The translations under genes and the position numbers were made by a program. 64,000 nucleotides of DNA from Vitrella brassicaformis CCMP3155 (lineage: Eukaryota > Protista > Chromerida): NCBI GenBank assembly GCA_001179505.1, contig CDMY01000973.1, positions 124,001 to 188,000 on the forward strand, given 5' to 3'. The notes under the pieces are model-generated. The model was given only the letters and a program-made list of their open reading frames with translations. It made no database searches and was not told the origin of the DNA. Positions 3,280 to 12,206 of the stretch are shown piece by piece. The first letter of the stretch is position 1. Each line of letters starts with the position of its first letter.

Positions 3280-4158
3280 TCACCATCTCGGGCGGTGGTT
3301 GCAGTACCCGAATGGGTTCTTGAAGAGGTACATCTGGTGGTAAATCTCTGCCCGCCAGAAGTCGTCAGGCTTGGCGCTGACGATCTCGGTCACGATGGGG
3401 CTGCTCCACCTGGCCTGCATCTCCTCCTTGACCTTCTCGGCCGCCGCCTTCTGCTCGTCGGAATGCACAAAGATGGCCGACCGATACTGCGGACCAACGT
3501 CGTTCCCCTGACACACAGGAAGTAAGAGAAGACACACATGGCTCTTTCCCTGTGTGTCCGTGTGTTGTGGTGGTCAGCCGCCCAACTCACCTGTCTGTTG
3601 GGTGTGGTAGGGTCATGGATGCGGAAGAGGTACTCGCACAGCTGCGCGTAGCTGACCTTGTCGGGGAAGTACTCGATCTGCAGGGCCTCGGCGTGGCCGG
3701 TGGTCTTGGAGCACACCTCCTCATAGGTGGGGTCGGGCTTGCTGCCGCCCATGTACCCCACCGATGTGCTCTTCAGCGCTGCCCCAAACTCATTGCGGAA
3801 GAACCTACACATCACGTCCCATCACATCACATCACATCACACGGGGAGGCTATGGCTCCTGCGCTCAGATCACTGACTTTTCGATGCCCCAGAAGCAGCC
3901 GCCAGCGAAAGACGCGTACTCCGAAGGCGCATCCTTGTCAGCGCCCTCCACATAGTTTGGCGCGGTGGCAGGCTTGCGCTCGTCGACTCCCAGGAAGGCC
4001 GCCATCAGGGGTGTGGTCGTGAGTGCTCGCCTGAACGGGCGGAGTGCGGCAGGGGACTGCTGCACGAGCCGCTGCAGCGACTGTGAGGAGGGAAGGGTGA
4101 AGGAGAAAGATGGGCTGAGTGCGACGGACAGGGCTACGCAGATCTTCAACGAACTCAT
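3280..4158 (-). CDS. msrA: Peptide methionine sulfoxide reductase A with signal + transit peptide
   Basis: Motifs FAGGCFWGIE, VGYMGG, PTYEEVCSKTTGHAE, HDPTTPNR|QGNDVGPQYRSAIF, AEIYHQMYL..GYC. Leader MSSLKICVALSVALSPSFSF then an S/R-rich segment. Confidence 0.95.
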
Positions 4159-4415
4159 CGCATTCCTTCCTGTTGCCGTGTTGGTAGTCTTTTGCAGCCG
4201 CGACGGTTCGTGTCTTTGCCTCGCAGAGTTACGGGCTAAAGTCCGTTTCGCCTTCTTAAAACGGAAGTCCATGCGGCTGAGGACTGAAGCGGCTTCTGTT
4301 CGCTATCGTGGCCTTCCCTTCCCATAGGCCGGCCTCGAGCACGATGCATTGTTGATAGCCATCGGCAGTCTTAGCTACCGCGCAACTTGTGGTTCCGCTT
4401 CCCTCGGCCTCTACA

Positions 4416-5899
4416 ATGACCGACAGGATGGCTCAAGTTGCGGGAGAGATACAGTGGGGCGTCCCGGCGTACCCCCTTCATCCCATTCCCACCTCCAGCC
4501 ACCAACCTGAACCCAACGGGGTTCTTTCGCAGCCCCCCGCCATTTCGCGTGCCATCTACGAGCAGTACGCTAGCTACCAGGCCCTTGCTGACCTCTACGG
4601 TGGCCTGCCCGTCCCGCAGAATCCCCCCCACCTCCTCCCCAGCCCCCAACCGCACACACGCAGCTCCCCGGCCAGTGACGCCATCGGCACGGCGAGTTCG
4701 TCCTCGTCTGCACACCAGCAGCAGGTGTGGCGGATGCCTAGCGGGCATGAGATCGCTGCGGCGCACAGCTTCCACCGCGCTGTGGAGGCCATGCAGGCGG
4801 GAGCCGGGGAGGGCAGCAGCGCACTTCTGCAGACGGACCATCCGGCTCCCGGCCGTCATCTGCAGCTGGTGTCGGCCATCCAGCAGCGAGAGATGGCCGA
4901 CGAGCCACACCCACACCCACCCCAGGCTGCGTCCGATGACCACCAAAACCACCACACCGGTGCCGGCAGTAGCAACGGTAGCAACAAGCGCCCCCTCACC
5001 GAAGAGGAGGTGCCCGAGTCGTCGATGGCGGTGCAGCCGTACGAGATGCCGGCGTTCAAGCCGTTTGACGGCGAGGCGCCGGTGCTGGTGCAGGGGGTGC
5101 TGCGCAACAAGCGGATCGAGATCCGCAAGGCATACCTGCAGCTGGAGGAGGAGGTGATAGCCAAGTACATGTCGGATGCGGAGCCGGCGCAGCTCGTGTC
5201 GCGACTGGTGCGGGAGAACCGGGATTGGGTGTTCGGGCTGTACAGTAGGAGCTTCCCAGGCTGGAGATCTGGCGGCGATAAGGCCAGAAAGTAAGAAGAG
5301 AACCACGGACGGGCCCTCAGATGTGTGTGGGTGGACACGTGTGTGTGTGTGTGTGTGTGTGCAGGTTGCGTCCGGTGTGGTGCCGTCACGTGGAGATCAA
5401 CACCACGTACGCGGTGGTGGACAACTCGAGCGGCGGCATCATCAAGGCCCACAGCAGCCTCAAGTACCTCCCCACTCCGCCAACCGCCCACACCTTCGTC
5501 TGCGTCAAGCACATCGAGTGCAAGCCCATCCAGGACAGTCAGATGGAGGAGGCCCGCGAGAAGGGCATGCAGGTGCTGCAGCCCAACCCGATGGTCAAGA
5601 TGGCCATCGTCGTGGTCCCACACGAGGAGCGGAAGCCCAACCACAACTTCGCCGTCACGGTAGCGACGCTCAACCAGGAGATCGCCATGAAGCAGGCCAA
5701 GAAGCGATACGGCACGGCCAAGAAGCTGGCGGGGTCATCGGGAGGGAGCAGCAAGGGGGAGGGTGGTGGAGAGGACCAGGGCATCGAGCACCCCATCACA
5801 GTGCCCCACCCGTCCCTCTCCCTCCTGGCCGGCCTCCCGCCCCTCGCACCCCCGCTCAACCTCCCAGGTGTGGGCGGCTTCGCAGAGCTCGCCATGATC

Positions 5900-5933
<34 letters not shown>

Positions 5934-6112
5934 AGGAACAGCCCACCACCGGCAGCAGCAAGCGGCGCCGGAAGGGTGGGGGCAGCGGGAGCAAGCGCGA
6001 GGCGGCGTTGGCGGAGTTGGCGCAGGAGGTGAACGTAGCTGAAGCGATTGGCGGCGTGAAGGTGGAGCAGGCGGATGCTGCCGCCAATGGGGAGGAGGGG
6101 CAAAACACTTAG
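4416..6112 (+). CDS. Hypothetical protein with P/Q/H-rich N-terminus, central globular region, polyQ and NLS-like motif
   Basis: Two long ORFs joined in frame by intron 5291-5364 (GTAAGA...TGCAG). GC3-biased codons, Q12 tract and SSKRRRK. Confidence 0.8.
5900..5935 (+). repeat. Coding CAG/CAA repeat (Q12)
   Basis: cagcagcagcagcagcagcaacagcagcagcaacag in frame in the 4416-6112 gene. Confidence 0.9.
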
Positions 6113-7052
6113 GATAAGGTTGACGAGAGGCGGGGTGCGGTGGTGTGGGGTGTGGGTATTGTAGAGATGGGGTGGGGTAGATGCGTCCATTGCCTGAGAG
6201 AAAAAGGGACTGACTGCCTGCCTGGCTGGCTGGCTGGCTGAGGAGTGGCGTCATGTCGTGTCATGACTGGTGAGGAGGTGTCATGACTGCCTGCTGCATG
6301 CAGATACACCTGTATGATCGATATGCCATACCATGCTTGCCTGGATGTATGGATGGATGGATGGATGGTTTTTTGAATGCCGCTGTCTGTCTAATTATTG
6401 GTTGACTGACTGAGTGGCTGCATACCATATGGTATACGCTGGTGTCACTCACTTGTGCAGACGTGCGGGGCGTGCGCTTGATGATTTGTTTGGCCGACTG
6501 ACTGACTGACTGACCGACTGGAAGGAACCGCTTGGGTGTTGAGATGAAAACCAATGCATCGCACAGACGCGGGATCAAGCTGATGGGGTGGGTGGTGTTC
6601 ACACGCTTGTCTTTCACCTTCACCTACTAGCCCACACACCGATTCCCCCCACTTTTAGGAAGGCTAGCGACACACATAAATGCATAAATGCGCTCACTCA
6701 TTGACACACACACACACACACACACTCGGGCGTATATACACATGGGGCTGTGGGTATGCAGTCGATCAGCAAAAACGCGACTCTACAATCCACAAAGGGA
6801 TGGAAAACTCACACAACACTGCGCATACACGTGTACGCACCTCTCTCGGTCTGCAGTGAGCGCCTCTTCGAGGCCTCACGCACACTCCGCCCCCTCTGTG
6901 TGCACACAGCACACTGACACACACACAGAGGGGGCACAGATGAATGTCTCCCCAATCGACTCGACCCCCAGGAAGCACAAAAAGCCCTCCCTCCAGGTAG
7001 CAAAAAGCAAGTTTTGAGCAAAAGAGAAGAGCTCATCGAGATCTCCTCCATG

Positions 7053-10000
7053 TTAGCCGAATCTGAAGACCTCGAGCATGAGGTGCATCCTGCCGTTGCA
7101 CCAGCCGTCCGCCTGCGTGAAGCGCCACGCCTCCTGCGCCATCGCCTCGGGGCCGCACACAAACACACCTACGCACACACACACAGACAAACACGCCGAC
7201 CATCCACACACAAAGGGGTGTGGTGTCGCCAGCTCACCGATGTGTTTTGGTGGGTGAGGTGAGGTCTGCAGCTTCTCGGCTGCCTGTGTGAGGAAGTCCG
7301 TGAGATTCCCCCTCCCCCGCTGCACACGCGCGTCGCCCTCGCCGTTGAGCGCGATCAGGTCGCTGTCGGTCGCTTCTTTGTTGGTCAGAAAAAAGCCGCA
7401 CCTGACACAGACAGACAGACAGACAGGCAGACAGACAGGCAGACAGACAAGGAGGATGGGTACTAAATGTGGTTGTGTCGTGTTTGCTGTGTGGCTGGCT
7501 GGCTGGCATACTTGTCTGTGGGGATGTGCCTGAAATGGTTGGCCATCACGTCGAACATGCCGGCGTCACGGAATGACCAGTACGCACAGCCCACCTGACA
7601 ATCATACACACACACACACACACACACACATGGGGGGGCGAGCTTGACTCATCCACCATTTATTCTCTCTCTGCGTTCACCAACGCCCTGACCACCGACC
7701 GACCTTCTGTGCGTTCAGCGTCGCGACAACGGATGCAACAGCCGTGACACCAGAGCCGCCCGCAACGAACAATATCGCGTCATAGTGCTTCATCTTCTGC
7801 TCAAAGCTGTGGCCATACGGCCCCCCGATGGCAACGAACGGCATCTCCACCCCTTTTGCCTCTCCCCCTCCCAATCCCCCGGCCCCCTCCCTCGCCCTCT
7901 CCTGCTTGTCCTGCAGCAAGGCCACCTTCTCCGCCAGTGCGGGCGTGAAGGCCTTGTACAGGCCGAGACGCTTCTTGGGGTCCATGACCTTGACGAGGAG
8001 AGCGAACCTGCCGTCGACAGTGGGTGGCGGGAAACCCTCCCCCTCTCCCTTTCTGTGTGCTGCCGCTGTCGTCTCGTCGAGGACAGGGACGATGCTGAAG
8101 GGGTGAGAGATGTTGCTGATGGATGGCATGAAGAGGGAGCACCACTGGCCCGGCCTGTGGACGAAGCCGCGCTTCTCGATCTGCAGGTAGACGGAGCCGT
8201 CGACCACTCGTGGGGGGCAGGAGGGGTCCAGCTGAGATCTCTGGTAGGTGACCGACATGATCGCCTCATACAGGTAATCGAGGACCACCAACGCCGTCGC
8301 GGCTGACATGGAGAGAGAGAGCAAGCCATCCTTCTCGCATCTGCCTGTCTGCCTGTCTGCCTGAGTGTGTGTGTGTGTTGCCTACCCAGTACGAGGTAGG
8401 AGAGGTTCCTAGCGTCTTCCCTCCAGGTGTCGCCGCCAACGTCTAGATGGAGGGCGATGAAGATGCCCGCTAGAGGCATCAAAGAGTGGAACTGCCGGAA
8501 CACGGCATACGCCGGCACCCGCATGAAGCCCGTCAGCACAGCCACCCACAGAATCGCACCTGCGCCACACACACACACACACACACACACACAAGAGAGA
8601 GAGAGAGAGGGACAGAGAGAGAGAGACGAATCGGTGAGATGAGCGATGGGGAGCGGTGGCAAAGGGACTGACACACCGGCAATGATGCCCCACAGGAAGT
8701 TCTGATCCAGTTCCTCGATCAGGATGATGATGAAGTGGACGACGGTGAAGTAGGCGGCGATCAGGGAGAAGAAAATGTGGTACTTGAGCGATCGCTCGAA
8801 CCCAAGACCAAACGCCACGGGATTCAACGTCATCTACACACACACGAGGTACTGGATGGTGTGTGTGTGTGTCTATGTGTGTATGTTGCCAACGGACCTT
8901 TCTCGGTGTGAGGAGCAGAGCCGTCGTGAGTGCGAGTGCCGTCCCATGCTGAATCGCGAAGCCGATCGACTGAACAAGACACGCAGGCCACGCACAGGCG
9001 AGGTGGGATGAAAGTGGGTGAAGGTCGGGCGGGTGTGTGGTGCTGAGCTGGGCTGAGCTGAGCTGAGCCACCGACCCTTCTGGCTGTGAGGGCGTCCCTG
9101 AGCTCGTTGTACTGGTGAACCACCATATAGACGATGCAGGCCGAGATGCCGCCGACCACAAACACACCTGATGATTGATGCGATGCCACACACGCACACG
9201 TCGCCCACCGGACATTCGCTGGCTGGTGCGTGGCTGCATCCGTCCCGCGCTGTCCTTCCTCACTTGTGAGAGACATGGAGCCAAACGTCTCCAGATACTC
9301 GTAGCCAGATCTGAGTCCACACACAAACGTGCTTGCGCGCGCCCTCCCACAGGTGACTCACTTGGGCGGTGCGAAGAGTGGCCTGGTGAGGATGGCCCGG
9401 AGCCTGTTGGTGGGCGGCAGGAGGTGCAGCAGCACCCCCAGCACCAGCACCGAAACCAACACGATCAGGTACACCCACAGCGGCCAATTGGTCGACTCCT
9501 CCACCTACGATTGTGCGGGGACGGGACGGACACAGCAGGCCATATATCATCTGTTTGCACCGCATAGGTCAATGAATGGTCTCTCCGTGGTGCTCGCTTC
9601 GCTTACGGCTGGGGCGTCAGTGACGGTGAAGCCCTCACCGACAGACGGCGGGAGGGTGTCAATGGTGGGGTCATCTTTCGCAAGGGCAAAGTCTGTCACG
9701 GGCGCCTGAGCCGAGATGCCCTTGCGGTTCCTGAACACACACGCACGCACAATCCATCCACCCATTGTGGTGTGTGTGTGTGTGTGTGTGGTGGGTGCAG
9801 GGGCTGTGCCTGCCATCCATTGTCTGTGTGAAGCTCACTGGAATGCTGGTCTCACGAAGATGCGCGTGGCGTTCTCGACGGGCATCGATTCTCCCTGCAG
9901 CGGCAGCACAAAGAAGCTCTTGTCGCGGCCAATCTAAGAAGCACAAGAGGGCAGAAACAAGAATCTAAGGAGCACAGGAGCCCAGGAGGACAAAGCCGTC

Positions 10001-10923
10001 CCGTTGACCTACCGAGAAAGTGAATCGGTCCGACTCTCCACTGTCAAGCTCGAAGTAGACCTCGAACCGCCCGAAGCACACACACGTGTTGTCCCAGGAA
10101 GGATAAGCACCCAGATTCACCCGGGCCTGCACCAACCTGCACACAATTATCCCAACAATCAGTGGTGCAGCGAAGCGCGACTGGCCAGTCTGTCTGCAGA
10201 CCCACACATCGCACACGTGCACCCACCCTGAGTCGACGGAGGTGACGAGTCCACCACCAGGGACGGCCGGGTCATCGAAGGTGCACGACGGCTTGGGGGT
10301 GGTGTCGTCGCGCTCCGAGGGATGAGAAATGTCGTCAGTTGCGTCCCTGTGAGTGAGGAGATAGAGGTGCGGCGTGTGTGTTGTTGGTTGATCTGATTGC
10401 CTGCCTGACGGGCTGCTGACAGACCTGATGTAGGCTGGGTTTCGGCCACCATTGCTCTGGAACACACAGCACGGGTCGCCCAACTCATCGCCGTTCGTCT
10501 TCAAGTCGCCGTCGGTGTCTTTCTGTCAATCCACAAGCAAACCACACACAGGCACCGTATCTTCTCCTTGCCTGGAGTGGTGTATGGTCCTACTTCGCAC
10601 AGTGCAGTGGTCCATGAGGGAACGCAGCTCAGCGGCTCCACGTCACCACAGCTCAACGACACCACATCATTGCCAAACTGATCGATGAGCAAACCAAAGC
10701 AAACAGACAGACAGACACATGACGAGGTCCAACCAGTGCTTGTTTCGCTTACATCGTTGAAGTTCGGTCCACTGCCGCAGCTGGGGTGCGTGATGCCACG
10801 GCAGCCAGGTGGGTATCTGGGCACAATTCTGGTCTCGTAACCGGTATACCCCTCACACCTCCAACACCTCAGCAGCGGCAAAACCAGAAGACTCCCAACC
10901 CACGAGCCAAGTGCACGAGCCAT
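7053..10923 (-). CDS. Ferric reductase/NADPH-oxidase superfamily flavocytochrome with a signal peptide and an extracellular temptin-like domain
   Basis: Four heme His (LKYH..VVH; RQFH..ALH), FAD motif PGQW..SHPFS, NADPH motifs IGGPYG and FVAGGSGVT, and C-terminal VFVCGP..EVF. The N-terminus has a signal peptide and WTTALCE|KDTDGDLKTNGDELGDPCCVF..SHP. Exons were traced through GT-AG introns; one or two middle junctions near 10000-10230 are ambiguous. Confidence 0.88.
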
Positions 10924-11108
10924 TCTTCTCGGGAGCTTAGGGCTCCAGCTGCAACAGCTTCAAAAGCACCTCGCCAAGCGTCAATCTTGGTGCGAATATC
11001 AATGCTTTCAGGCCTCCGTCTTTCGGCTAAGCTCGCAGTTTCGAGCTCGCACGCTAATTGGAAAGCTTCTCGAGAACGCCACATCACAGCTAGATTCACG
11101 TTGTCCCG

Positions 11109-12206
11109 ATGGCCGCAGTGGCGATGAGTCCCATGAGGACAACGCTGCCATATGACTCGCTGCCTGAGGACCTCGTGACGATGATGCTGGCCTTCCTGGA
11201 CGTGGACTCGCTGATGCGCACCCGCAAGACGGACCGCCACCACCGCATGCTGCTCGGCGTGGCCTACCTGCAGCTCCGGCTGTCCCTCGTGGTCAGCAGC
11301 CTCACTCTTGCACTCGGCCACACATTGGACATCCCTCTGCCGCAGCTGCCACTCCCTCTTGCACTGAGCGCCGTCTCTGCAACGACCATGGTGATCCGCG
11401 GGCTGGCGCGGCGACTCTGGATGCTCGAGAAGGGCGGTCGTTGGGCTCGGTGGAAGGCCATTCTCGAGATGGTCTTCTTCATGCGGGGTCGGAAGGTTGT
11501 GGTGCTGGGCGATGAGAGCTTTGGGGTGTTCAGCCGGCGGGAGGCCTTCCTGCGGGCCCCGGAGGCGGTCAGGCAGTGGAAGATGCTCAGCAGAGAGACG
11601 TGTGTGTACCATGCGACGAGCGATAGCACCAGGCCACTGATGAGCGGCGACGGGATCATGCGCTTTTACACCGACCCCTACCGACAGCCCACTGTGCGCG
11701 CCACTGCCAGCCCTATGTTCCCTTGCGGCTTTGACCGCACCGATCCCACCTCTGAGATCGACGGCCGCACGTACGTCACATACTCCAACCTGATCGCCTT
11801 CAACCTCATGCTGTGCATCATGCGCCTTCGCCCCGCCGTCTACCGCCACCAGTGGACCACAACCGCCACTGAGTCGGCCGCTTTCCAGCGGGCGACCACA
11901 ATGATGCGCGAGGGGTTCGAGTCGACCGACACGCTGCTCCCGGGAGTGCACCAGATCTCCTACAACATGAAGCGCGTGATGCTGACAAATGGGATCGAGG
12001 ACGGGTTCATGGCGTTTGTGCAGATGATGCAGTGGACGTCGATGATCGGCAGGTCGATCCAGGTGGACGTGCTGACCAGCGAGGGCGCGCCGTACGCCGT
12101 CACACGCGGTAGGCTGGATCGCGTGATGGGCGACGTGTTGGGGGATGAGGTTTGGGTGAAGGGCAAGAAGTACAGGGAGCGCAGGTTCTGGGAGGAGGTC
12201 GGGTGA
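11109..12206 (+). CDS. Intronless F-box-like protein (resembles a lineage-expanded Vitrella family)
   Basis: Single 365-aa ORF. N-terminal DSLPEDLVTMMLAFLDVDSLMRTRKTDRHHR fits the F-box consensus LP.E....I...L. Confidence 0.75.
   Translation: MAAVAMSPMRTTLPYDSLPEDLVTMMLAFLDVDSLMRTRKTDRHHRMLLGVAYLQLRLSLVVSSLTLALGHTLDIPLPQLPLPLALSAVSATTMVIRGLARRLWMLEKGGRWARWKAILEMVFFMRGRKVVVLGDESFGVFSRREAFLRAPEAVRQWKMLSRETCVYHATSDSTRPLMSGDGIMRFYTDPYRQPTVRATASPMFPCGFDRTDPTSEIDGRTYVTYSNLIAFNLMLCIMRLRPAVYRHQWTTTATESAAFQRATTMMREGFESTDTLLPGVHQISYNMKRVMLTNGIEDGFMAFVQMMQWTSMIGRSIQVDVLTSEGAPYAVTRGRLDRVMGDVLGDEVWVKGKKYRERRFWEEVG

What the first reader, a model, noticed from the sequence alone, without database searches (positions are those of the whole stretch)
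7053..10923. Temptin-like domain fused to a ferric reductase/NOX flavocytochrome
Seen: the spliced N-terminus reads signal peptide-YTGYETRIVP..GITHPSCGSGPNFND|FGNDVV..WTTALCE|KDTDGDLKTNGDELGDPCCVF..ISHPS. A beta-rich segment ending IFVRPAFQ|NRKGIS (FN3-like) follows, then the TM bis-heme, FAD and NADPH domains. Knowledge: the signature N.FG.DF..WT..LC..DSDGDG.TNG.ELGDP.C.W..SHPG defines temptin (Aplysia water-borne pheromone) and the related domain found with copper monooxygenases in some animals and stramenopiles. FRE/NOX enzymes move electrons from NADPH to extracellular Fe3+/Cu2+ or O2. Inference: an extracellular metal- or ligand-binding module coupled to transmembrane electron transfer. 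I do not recognise this architecture.
Basis: partly seen in the sequence, partly recalled or inferred. Interest (0 to 1): 0.72.

Follow-up and report, generated by a model that had tools for sequence, protein, structure and literature searches.

The report
Temptin domain fused to membrane reductase
This alga makes one membrane protein that joins an outward-facing, probably calcium-binding "temptin" domain to an NADPH-driven enzyme that carries electrons across the membrane; the same join exists in a few other protists, but I found no paper that describes it.

Summary
On the minus strand, 10923..7053 holds a 17-exon gene. All introns are GT..AG and the CDS is 2463 nt (820 aa). Single spliced RNA contigs in two public runs from two studies cover every exon in one open frame, so the temptin and reductase exons belong to one mRNA.

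- **Temptin domain:** exon 3 alone passes Pfam's Temptin_C threshold (34 bits, cut-off 27). Exons 1, 2 and 4 supply the rest of the domain.
- **Reductase:** an extra membrane helix (TM0) is followed by a six-helix domain with two heme-binding His pairs, then FAD (HPFS) and NADPH (GGPYG, GGSGVT, CGP) motifs.
- **Not unique:** Temptin_C plus this kind of reductase also occurs in Perkinsus chesapeaki, in several environmental eukaryotes and in a transcript that also carries DOMON domains. All are distant relatives; the best match to the FAD/NADPH exon among 1.84 billion representatives scores 45 bits.
- **Literature:** no paper in the library joins temptin to a reductase.
- **Domain core:** the Temptin_C core resembles an EF-hand calcium loop.
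- **Domain partners:** elsewhere it sits at the N-terminus of copper monooxygenases, a lipid desaturase and a protein of repeated metal-binding motifs.
- **NOX signature:** the protein lacks two of the four signature residues (His-119, Thr-178), so I favour a metal reductase over an oxidase. This is unproven.
- **FN3-like segment:** not testable here.

Verdict: a new variant of a known kind, of moderate interest.

The parts
10924..11024 (-). 5' UTR (at least 101 nt), no upstream ATG
   Evidence: RNA contig X6 record 11 reaches 11024; ATG scan
10753..10923 (-). Exon 1: start codon, signal peptide (hydrophobic leader ending ..RCWRCEG), first blocks of Temptin_C (YTGYETRIVP.., GITH, PNFND)
   Evidence: aligned with the mature N-termini FP.YQ..IPNG / VGH / LNPFG of P0011, P0013, P0040; joint 10677/10753 in RNA
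10594..10677 (-). Exon 2: Temptin_C middle (FGNDVV .. SWTTALCE) with a Cys-containing insert
   Evidence: joints
10425..10522 (-). Exon 3: Temptin_C core, EF-hand-like loop DTDGDLKTNGDE followed by LGDPCC
   Evidence: Pfam PF24784, 34 bits, E 4.2e-8, profile positions 61-85 of 98; 55-70% identical to the same stretch of P0027, P0043, P0042, P0011; resemblance to calmodulin loops
10227..10346 (-). Exon 4: end of Temptin_C (DDISHPS) and start of the linker
   Evidence: joints
9607..10136 (-). Exons 5-7 (10136-10013, 9933-9839, 9730-9607): about 115 residues outside the membrane, fold unknown, two Cys, one N-glycosylation sequon (NAT)
   Evidence: no Pfam hit and no similarity to any relative; joints
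9362..9504 (-). Exon 8: extra transmembrane helix TM0 (WPLWVYLIVLVSVLVLGVLLHLL) and juxtamembrane TRPLFAPP
   Evidence: Kyte-Doolittle peak 2.86; aligned with TM0 and TRPLFWP of P0011
8898..9310 (-). Exons 9-11 (9310-9264, 9167-9076, 8969-8898): cytosolic loop, TM1, TM2
   Evidence: joints
8677..8833 (-). Exon 12: TM3 with the first heme His pair (model residues 409 and 423, 13 residues between) and the start of TM4
   Evidence: Pfam Ferric_reduct 23.6 bits; His columns aligned with relatives
8386..8559 (-). Exon 13: TM4, TM5 with the second heme His pair (residues 467 and 480), start of TM6
7704..8302 (-). Exon 14: end of TM6, FAD-binding domain (HPFS) with low-complexity inserts, start of the NADPH domain (GGPYG, GGSGVT)
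   Evidence: Pfam FAD_binding_8 and NAD_binding_6; NOX2 and DUOX1 are the best PDB sequences; 38 weak relatives
7053..7594 (-). Exons 15-17 (7594-7512, 7401-7238, 7168-7053): rest of the NADPH domain, VFVCGPEAM motif, C-terminal ..EVFRFG, stop codon
   Evidence: exon 17 matches the C-termini of P0010, P0007, P0011
6600..7052 (-). 3' UTR (at least 453 nt; the RNA contig runs on past 6600)
   Evidence: pieces 6600-7165

Best explanation
[quoted passage not shown] After a signal peptide come a complete Temptin_C domain and about 115 further residues, which lie outside the membrane (cell surface or lumen). An extra helix (TM0) brings the chain back to the cytosol. Six helices then carry two His pairs of the kind that bind two stacked hemes, and a cytosolic FAD/NADPH domain follows.

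What is inferred: electrons go from NADPH to FAD, to the inner heme, to the outer heme, and then to an acceptor on the outer face directly under the ectodomain. The protein lacks two of the four residues that mark oxygen-reducing NOX enzymes (His-119 and Thr-178 equivalents). Temptin_C elsewhere is always the N-terminal partner of metal-dependent redox enzymes. The acceptor is therefore most likely a metal ion or metal centre (Cu2+ or Fe3+) and not O2. The Temptin_C domain would act as a calcium-stabilised cap that holds or presents that substrate.
For: - Gene model and single mRNA.
- Temptin_C: (34 bits against a cut-off of 27); collinear blocks.
- Topology: signal peptide plus TM0 plus six helices. 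The AF2 model of the Perkinsus relative P0027 has seven membrane helices and a confident core (pLDDT above 90) whose best PDB matches are SpNOX, DUOX1, NOX2 and NOX5.
- Cofactor motifs: four heme His in the same columns as relatives, HPFS, GGPYG, GGSGVT, CGP.
- NOX signature as defined by Zhang et al. 2013 (PMC3591440): the window has Ile four residues after the second TM3 His, and Trp-Gly where NOX-type hits P0032, P0016, P0024 and P0019 have Thr-Gly.
- Temptin_C partners: FRD reductases, Cu2 monooxygenases, Lipid_desat, eight MopE-type metal-binding motifs and DOMON, with Temptin_C always N-terminal.
- EF-hand-like core: the only PDB sequence matches of the Temptin_C profile are calmodulin loops.
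Against: - No activity, location or regulation data exist.
- The related chromerid Chromera velia shows no ferric reductase activity and takes up iron without reduction (Sutak 2010, as reviewed in PMC7676907). A role in reductive iron uptake is therefore not expected by default.
- The NOX signature is an empirical rule with known exceptions, and my TM4 alignment rests on fragments.
- The calmodulin matches are below significance (E 0.06 or weaker), and the window has Leu at the loop's Gly-6 position.
- The Temptin_C structure models were poor (pLDDT 65, and under 50 in the full-length relative), so no metal site could be seen.
- The partner argument is guilt by association from about 13 proteins.
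Confidence: 0.5

Rival explanations
1. It is a DUOX-like oxidase. The core reduces O2 to superoxide or H2O2 at the outer heme, and the temptin ectodomain caps the site, shapes the product, or gates activity in response to extracellular calcium or a ligand.
For: - Same layout as DUOX: signal peptide, ectodomain, extra helix, six-helix core (DUOX described in PMC3591440).
- The best solved-structure matches by sequence are NOX2 and DUOX1, and by fold of the Perkinsus relative are SpNOX, DUOX1, NOX2 and NOX5.
- No solved FRE-type structure appears among these matches, so this ranking cannot separate the two classes.
Against: - The His-119 and Thr-178 equivalents are missing.
- There are no cytosolic EF-hands or other known NOX regulatory parts.
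- The loop between TM0 and TM1 is only about 37 residues.
Confidence: 0.2
2. It supplies electrons to a separate extracellular redox enzyme. Temptin_C would serve as a docking module, for example pairing with another Temptin_C-bearing or copper protein. This would parallel MsrQ feeding MsrP, or DOMON/cytochrome b561 systems.
For: - Temptin_C is the N-terminal domain of DBH/PHM-like copper monooxygenases, which need an outside electron donor (P0041, P0043, P0047).
- P0039 combines Temptin_C, three DOMON domains and the reductase.
- Aplysia temptin is described as the 'glue' of a pheromone protein complex (title of Cummins 2007, cited in PMC3091767).
- Earlier scan notes report a secreted PHM/DBH-like protein and a phytocyanin in this genome (untested).
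Against: - No partner has been identified.
- No Temptin_C monooxygenase was seen in this window.
- The argument is purely associative.
Confidence: 0.15
3. The reductase half is inactive and the protein is mainly a surface or adhesion receptor that kept a decayed reductase scaffold.
For: - The FAD/NADPH exon is extremely divergent: best hit 45 bits among 1.84 billion representatives.
- It carries low-complexity inserts.
- It forms a long unplaced branch in the tree.
Against: - All four heme His and all FAD and NADPH motifs are kept.
- The gene is spliced and expressed.
Confidence: 0.08
4. Two neighbouring genes (a secreted temptin and a reductase) were wrongly read as one.
For: None found. An assembled contig alone cannot exclude a chimeric assembly.
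Against: - There is one continuous open frame across 17 exons, with no stop and no room for a second start.
- Every junction between exons 4 and 8 is seen as a splice joint.
- Identical full-length contigs occur in two runs of two studies.
- The same architecture occurs on intronless contigs elsewhere.
Confidence: 0.02

Closest known systems
Perkinsus chesapeaki FOL47_006456 (P0027; UniRef name 'ferric-chelate reductase (NADPH)') and environmental 'predicted ferric reductases' P0011, P0013/P0044, P0045, P0040
   Same: Same order of parts: signal peptide, N-terminal Temptin_C, linker, extra helix with an LFxP motif after it, six-helix bis-heme domain, FAD and NADPH domains.
   Different: - They are only distant kin: 26-31% identity over the FAD/NADPH exon and 55-70% only in the 20-residue Temptin core.
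- The linker region shows no similarity.
- The tree does not place the window's protein with them.
DUOX1/DUOX2 of animals
   Same: Signal peptide, large ectodomain, an additional transmembrane helix, then the NOX-type six-helix core with a cytosolic FAD/NADPH domain (PMC3591440; PDB 6wxr and 7d3e are weak sequence matches).
   Different: - The ectodomain is Temptin_C, not a peroxidase-like domain.
- There are no cytosolic EF-hands.
- The NOX signature residues His-119 and Thr-178 are absent.
Fungal FRE and plant FRO ferric-chelate reductases
   Same: Bis-heme FRD domain plus FAD_binding_8 and NAD_binding_6, and no His-119.
   Different: They have no N-terminal ectodomain and no extra helix. 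Sequence similarity to them is too low to show up among the best hits.
Mollusc temptin and Temptin_C-DBH-like copper monooxygenases (Lymnaea P0041; diatom Seminavis P0047)
   Same: The same Pfam domain in the same N-terminal secreted position, with the D-x-D-G-D-G..N-G-x-E-L-G-D-P-x-C core.
   Different: The partner is a soluble copper monooxygenase, or none, and not a membrane reductase. The window's copy has Leu for the loop Gly and extra cysteines.
DOMON-containing transmembrane electron carriers (DOMON-FRD, cytochrome b561-DOMON)
   Same: An extracytoplasmic accessory domain is coupled to a transmembrane heme electron path. P0039 carries both Temptin_C and DOMON. Zhang 2013 lists DOMON as an FRD module.
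   Different: DOMON binds heme or sugar. Temptin_C has no known cofactor and no detectable structural relative.

Membership tests
Temptin_C (Pfam PF24784) | Profile score above Pfam's gathering cut-off (27 bits) | tested here: met
   Exon 3 alone scores 34 bits, E 4.2e-8
Temptin_C (Pfam PF24784) | Full set of conserved blocks in order: aromatic-P-x-Y..IP, G/T-H, LN.FG..F, W..LC, DxDGDG..NG.ELGDP.C, HPG/S | tested here: met
   Exons 1-4 supply each block in order. Deviations: IVPRYPPG for IPNG, and Leu for the second Gly of DGDG.
Ferric reductase domain (FRD) superfamily, long form (FRE/NOX) | Four heme-ligating His, two in TM3 and two in TM5 | tested here: met
   His at model residues 409/423 (exon 12) and 467/480 (exon 13), in the His columns of relatives
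Ferric reductase domain (FRD) superfamily, long form (FRE/NOX) | Pfam Ferric_reduct, FAD_binding_8 and NAD_binding_6 above their cut-offs | tested here: inconclusive
   Exon pieces score 23.6 (cut-off 28), 18.4 (22) and 13.9 (22.2) bits.
Ferric reductase domain (FRD) superfamily, long form (FRE/NOX) | FAD motif HPF[ST]; NADPH motifs GPYG, G-x-G-x-T and CGP | tested here: met
   HPFS, GGPYG and GGSGVT in exon 14; VFVCGPEAM in exon 17
NOX (oxygen-reducing) branch, signature of Zhang et al. 2013 | His-119 equivalent, four residues after the second TM3 His | tested here: not met
   The window reads H-F-I-I-I; the NOX-EF hit P0032 reads H-T-I-A-H (definition)
NOX (oxygen-reducing) branch, signature of Zhang et al. 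2013 | Thr-178 / Gly-179 dipeptide at the start of TM4 | tested here: not met
   The window has W-G where P0032, P0016, P0024 and P0019 have T-G. The alignment uses exon fragments, so confidence is moderate.
DUOX | Peroxidase-homology ectodomain and cytosolic EF-hands | tested here: not met
   No peroxidase or EF-hand Pfam hit in any exon; the TM0-TM1 loop is about 37 residues
   No profile hit in exons 5-7 taken singly and no similar relative. Folding needs the joined sequence, which was left out.

The most novel reading that the evidence does not exclude
Temptin_C is a previously unrecognised extracytoplasmic module of redox metalloenzyme systems. In this protein it would dock a copper or iron centre, or a Temptin_C-bearing copper monooxygenase, onto the outer heme of an NADPH-driven transmembrane wire. 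That would give protists an ascorbate-independent way to power extracellular monooxygenation, and it would recast mollusc 'temptin' pheromones as derived from such a module.
Probability: 0.12. Interest if true: 0.8.

Novelty: new variant of a known kind. Interest (0 to 1): 0.5.

Why it matters
The ferric reductase/NOX superfamily is known to be modular (peroxidase domain in DUOX, EF-hands, DOMON). A Temptin_C ectodomain is not among the modules catalogued by Zhang et al. 2013, and I found no paper that mentions it. Temptin_C itself has no known biochemical function beyond the Aplysia pheromone story. It recurs at the N-terminus of membrane reductases, copper monooxygenases, a di-iron desaturase and a protein of repeated metal-binding motifs. 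That gives a concrete, testable lead: it may be a calcium-stabilised accessory of extracellular redox and metal chemistry. For chromerid biology, the gene is a candidate cell-surface reductase in a group where the one species tested shows no ferric reductase activity.

Tried and rejected
- **Getting the full protein by reference.** The 1.84-billion representative search with exon 14 found neither the window's own protein nor any close relative. Word searches with P0027 and P0013 did not return it either. All work on the window's protein was therefore exon by exon. The joined 820-aa model was never scanned, searched or folded.
- **PDB sequence search with the TM exons 12 and 13.** Nothing usable.
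- **AF2 of Temptin_C** (P0013:14-112 with 12 rows): pLDDT 65, and no Foldseek match in the PDB.
- **AF2 of the whole Perkinsus relative.** The core is confident, but the ectodomain (residues 1-309) is below pLDDT 50, so it says nothing about how the ectodomain sits on the hemes or about an FN3-like fold.
- **Tree of the FAD/NADPH region.** The window's exon is a long unplaced branch, so one origin versus several origins of the fusion is unresolved.
- **TM5 His spacing as a NOX/FRE discriminator.** Spacing (12 or 13 residues between) varies among relatives and in a NOX-EF hit, so I dropped the idea.
- **Weak tblastn hits of relatives elsewhere in the window** (29241, 40557, 48468). No Pfam support, taken as chance.
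- **ESM Atlas look-up of P0027.** It returned only generic FRE/NOX clusters.
- **Earlier scan notes.** None mention temptin.
Full report
**Observation.** I translated the minus strand of 6900-11000 in three frames and searched for frame-keeping GT..AG pairs between the coding stretches.
- This gave one model of 17 exons: 10923-10753, 10677-10594, 10522-10425, 10346-10227, 10136-10013, 9933-9839, 9730-9607, 9504-9362, 9310-9264, 9167-9076, 8969-8898, 8833-8677, 8559-8386, 8302-7704, 7594-7512, 7401-7238 and 7168-7053.
- The CDS is 2463 nt (820 aa), with no internal stop.
- The 5'UTR has no upstream ATG.

**One transcript.** Eight public runs hold the stretch. Three hold 94-99% of its sampled words (genomic DNA) and five hold 40-54%, which is what a spliced RNA would give.
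- I laid four of the latter on 6600-11400.
- Run X6 (2013, study P4) has a 3711-nt contig and run X7 (2015, study P2) a 3633-nt contig. Both start in the 5'UTR (11024 and 10946) and pass through all exons to 6600 and beyond.
- Ten introns appear as CT..AC joints at my boundaries.
- The other six lie at microsatellites, where the tool drops joints. The contig's own coordinates leave exactly the lengths of the missing exons: 522 nt between the pieces at 10753 and 9729, 372 nt between 9362 and 8555, and 84 nt between 7702 and 7398.
- The temptin exons and the reductase exons are therefore on one mRNA with one open frame.
- The tool could not confirm that these runs are RNA, but they hold the intron-less form.

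**Domains, exon by exon.** I did so, and I left out every step that needs the joined sequence (Pfam on the whole protein, homology search with it, folding it).
- Exon 3 (32 aa) alone matches Pfam Temptin_C above the curated cut-off: 34 against 27 bits, E 4.2e-8, profile positions 61-85 of 98.
- Aligned with relatives, exons 1, 2 and 4 provide the other conserved blocks in order. These are the mature N-terminus (aromatic-x-x-Y...IP), the G/T-H, LN.FG (the exon 1/2 junction falls inside it), W..LC, and the final HPS.
- Exon 12 matches Ferric_reduct (23.6 bits), and exon 14 matches FAD_binding_8 and NAD_binding_6 (18.4 and 13.9 bits). These are below the cut-offs, as expected for pieces.
- By sequence, exon 14's best solved relatives are NOX2 and DUOX1.

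**Anatomy and topology.**
- The chain starts with a hydrophobic leader. Then come Temptin_C (about residues 26-130) and about 115 residues of unknown fold (exons 5-7) with one NAT sequon.
- Next is a strongly hydrophobic helix TM0 in exon 8 (Kyte-Doolittle 2.86), followed by a loop of about 37 residues and six further helices.
- TM3 carries His 409 and 423. TM5 carries His 467 and 480. Both pairs fall in the His columns of relatives.
- The cytosolic part keeps HPFS (FAD), GGPYG and GGSGVT (NADPH), VFVCGPEAM, and a C-terminal FRFG.
- Seven helices plus a signal peptide put the temptin domain outside and the NADPH site in the cytosol. This is the DUOX solution to the same topological problem (PMC3591440).
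- An AF2 model of the Perkinsus relative P0027 shows the same seven helices and a confident core. Its best PDB matches are SpNOX, DUOX1, NOX2 and NOX5. Its ectodomain was not modelled.

**Relatives.**
- Exon 14 searched with HMMER against 1.84 billion cluster representatives gave only 38 hits. The best was 45 bits, E 9e-7. The reductase half is thus very divergent, and the window's own protein is not in that library.
- Three of the 38 hits carry Temptin_C at their N-terminus: P0013, P0011 and P0027.
- P0027 is Perkinsus chesapeaki FOL47_006456, named 'ferric-chelate reductase (NADPH)' in UniRef.
- Word searches added three more:
  - P0040;
  - P0045;
  - P0039, an EukProt transcript with three DOMON domains between Temptin_C and the reductase.
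- P0013 lies on a 2.8-kb intron-less, mRNA-like contig.
- The fusion is therefore recurrent in protists and already sits in public databases, but it is rare.
- The window's exon 8 shares TM0 and a TRPLF.P juxtamembrane motif with the P0011 group and P0027. This hints at common descent of the whole layout.
- The tree of the FAD/NADPH region leaves the window's protein as a long unplaced branch, so the question of common descent stays open.
- Within the P0011 subfamily, P0001, P0021 and P0029 carry a different Cys-rich ectodomain instead of Temptin_C. The ectodomain has been swapped between relatives.

**What Temptin_C may do.**
- In all nine long proteins with Temptin_C re-scanned and in the three scanned, the domain starts between residues 8 and 81. 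In most it follows directly on the leader. The partners are listed here:
  - FRD reductases;
  - copper type II monooxygenases (Lymnaea P0041, P0043, Seminavis P0047);
  - a lipid desaturase (P0042);
  - eight MopE-type putative metal-binding motifs (P0048);
  - DOMON (P0039).
- A profile of the domain finds no significant PDB relative. All of its sub-threshold matches are calmodulin EF-hand loops, aligned as helix, D-x-D-G-D-G-x-x-x-x-x-E, helix.
- The window reads DTDGDLKTNGDE. It keeps the acidic ligand positions but has Leu at the Gly-6 position.
- I therefore read the core as an EF-hand-like calcium site. This is an inference from the known DxDxDG motif class. The association with metal redox enzymes is a lead to its role and not a demonstration.

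**NOX or metal reductase?**
- Zhang et al. [quoted passage not shown]
- The window has the His-101 and Gly-179 equivalents. It has Ile at the His-119 position and Trp at the Thr-178 position.
- The NOX-EF hit P0032 has H-T-I-A-H, and P0032, P0016, P0024 and P0019 have T-G. None of the Temptin_C fusions has His-119.
- This favours a metal reductase type. However, the rule has exceptions and the TM4 alignment rests on fragments.
- Against a simple iron-uptake role: the chromerid Chromera velia has no ferric reductase activity (Sutak 2010, as reviewed in PMC7676907). Vitrella itself has not been tested as far as I found.

**Literature.**
- Whole-word searches for temptin found 45 papers. The search for temptin with reductase returned six, and the search for temptin with monooxygenase and copper returned six. 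By their titles and abstracts these concern molluscs and other invertebrates or oomycete secretomes.
- None describes a temptin-reductase fusion, and the FRD superfamily survey does not contain the word.

**Organism.** Earlier notes of this scan call the genome Vitrella brassicaformis. I did not verify this independently. The composition (about 58% GC) and the alveolate relative are compatible with it. The earlier notes contain nothing on temptin.

**Verdict.** The gene is a real, expressed, highly divergent member of a rare and undescribed variant of the FRE/NOX flavocytochromes. I favour the metal reductase reading with a calcium-binding cap at about even odds.

Noticed in passing
window 3390-4272 (-): A spliced peptide methionine sulfoxide reductase (MsrA) gene. 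The ORF 3390-3812 hits Pfam PMSR at 81.7 bits. The upstream ORF 3865-4272 ends in the GCFWG active-site motif and begins with a hydrophobic leader.
   Followed up: partly
window 11109-12206 (+): A 365-aa ORF lies head to head with the reductase gene. RNA contigs of the two genes end and start only about 30-75 nt apart (11024 against 11052-11098), which suggests a shared bidirectional promoter. It has no Pfam hit.
   Followed up: partly
window about 5900-7052: The reductase RNA contig runs about 690 nt past 6600. Either the 3'UTR exceeds 1.1 kb, or the assembly merges it with the convergent + strand gene (ORFs 4389-6112, with a poly-Q run).
   Followed up: no
window 7169-7237, 7402-7511, 7595-7703, 8560-8676 and other introns: Most introns of this gene are filled with CA/GT and CAGA-type microsatellites. 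The reads tool skipped joints there.
   Followed up: no
P0001, P0021, P0029 (relatives, not in the window): These belong to the same seven-helix reductase subfamily as P0011 and P0013, but a different Cys-rich N-terminal ectodomain (AWCW..C..C..CTAEC) replaces Temptin_C. The ectodomain has been swapped on a conserved core.
   Followed up: partly
contig of P0040 (JGI sample 3300059473, 4807 nt): The Temptin_C-reductase gene lies among three close-packed, same-strand, intron-less genes. The source is a compact genome of unknown kind.
   Followed up: no
P0042 and P0048 (relatives): Temptin_C is also fused to a Lipid_desat (di-iron desaturase) domain, and to eight MopE-type putative metal-binding motifs. 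I found neither architecture described in the literature.
   Followed up: partly
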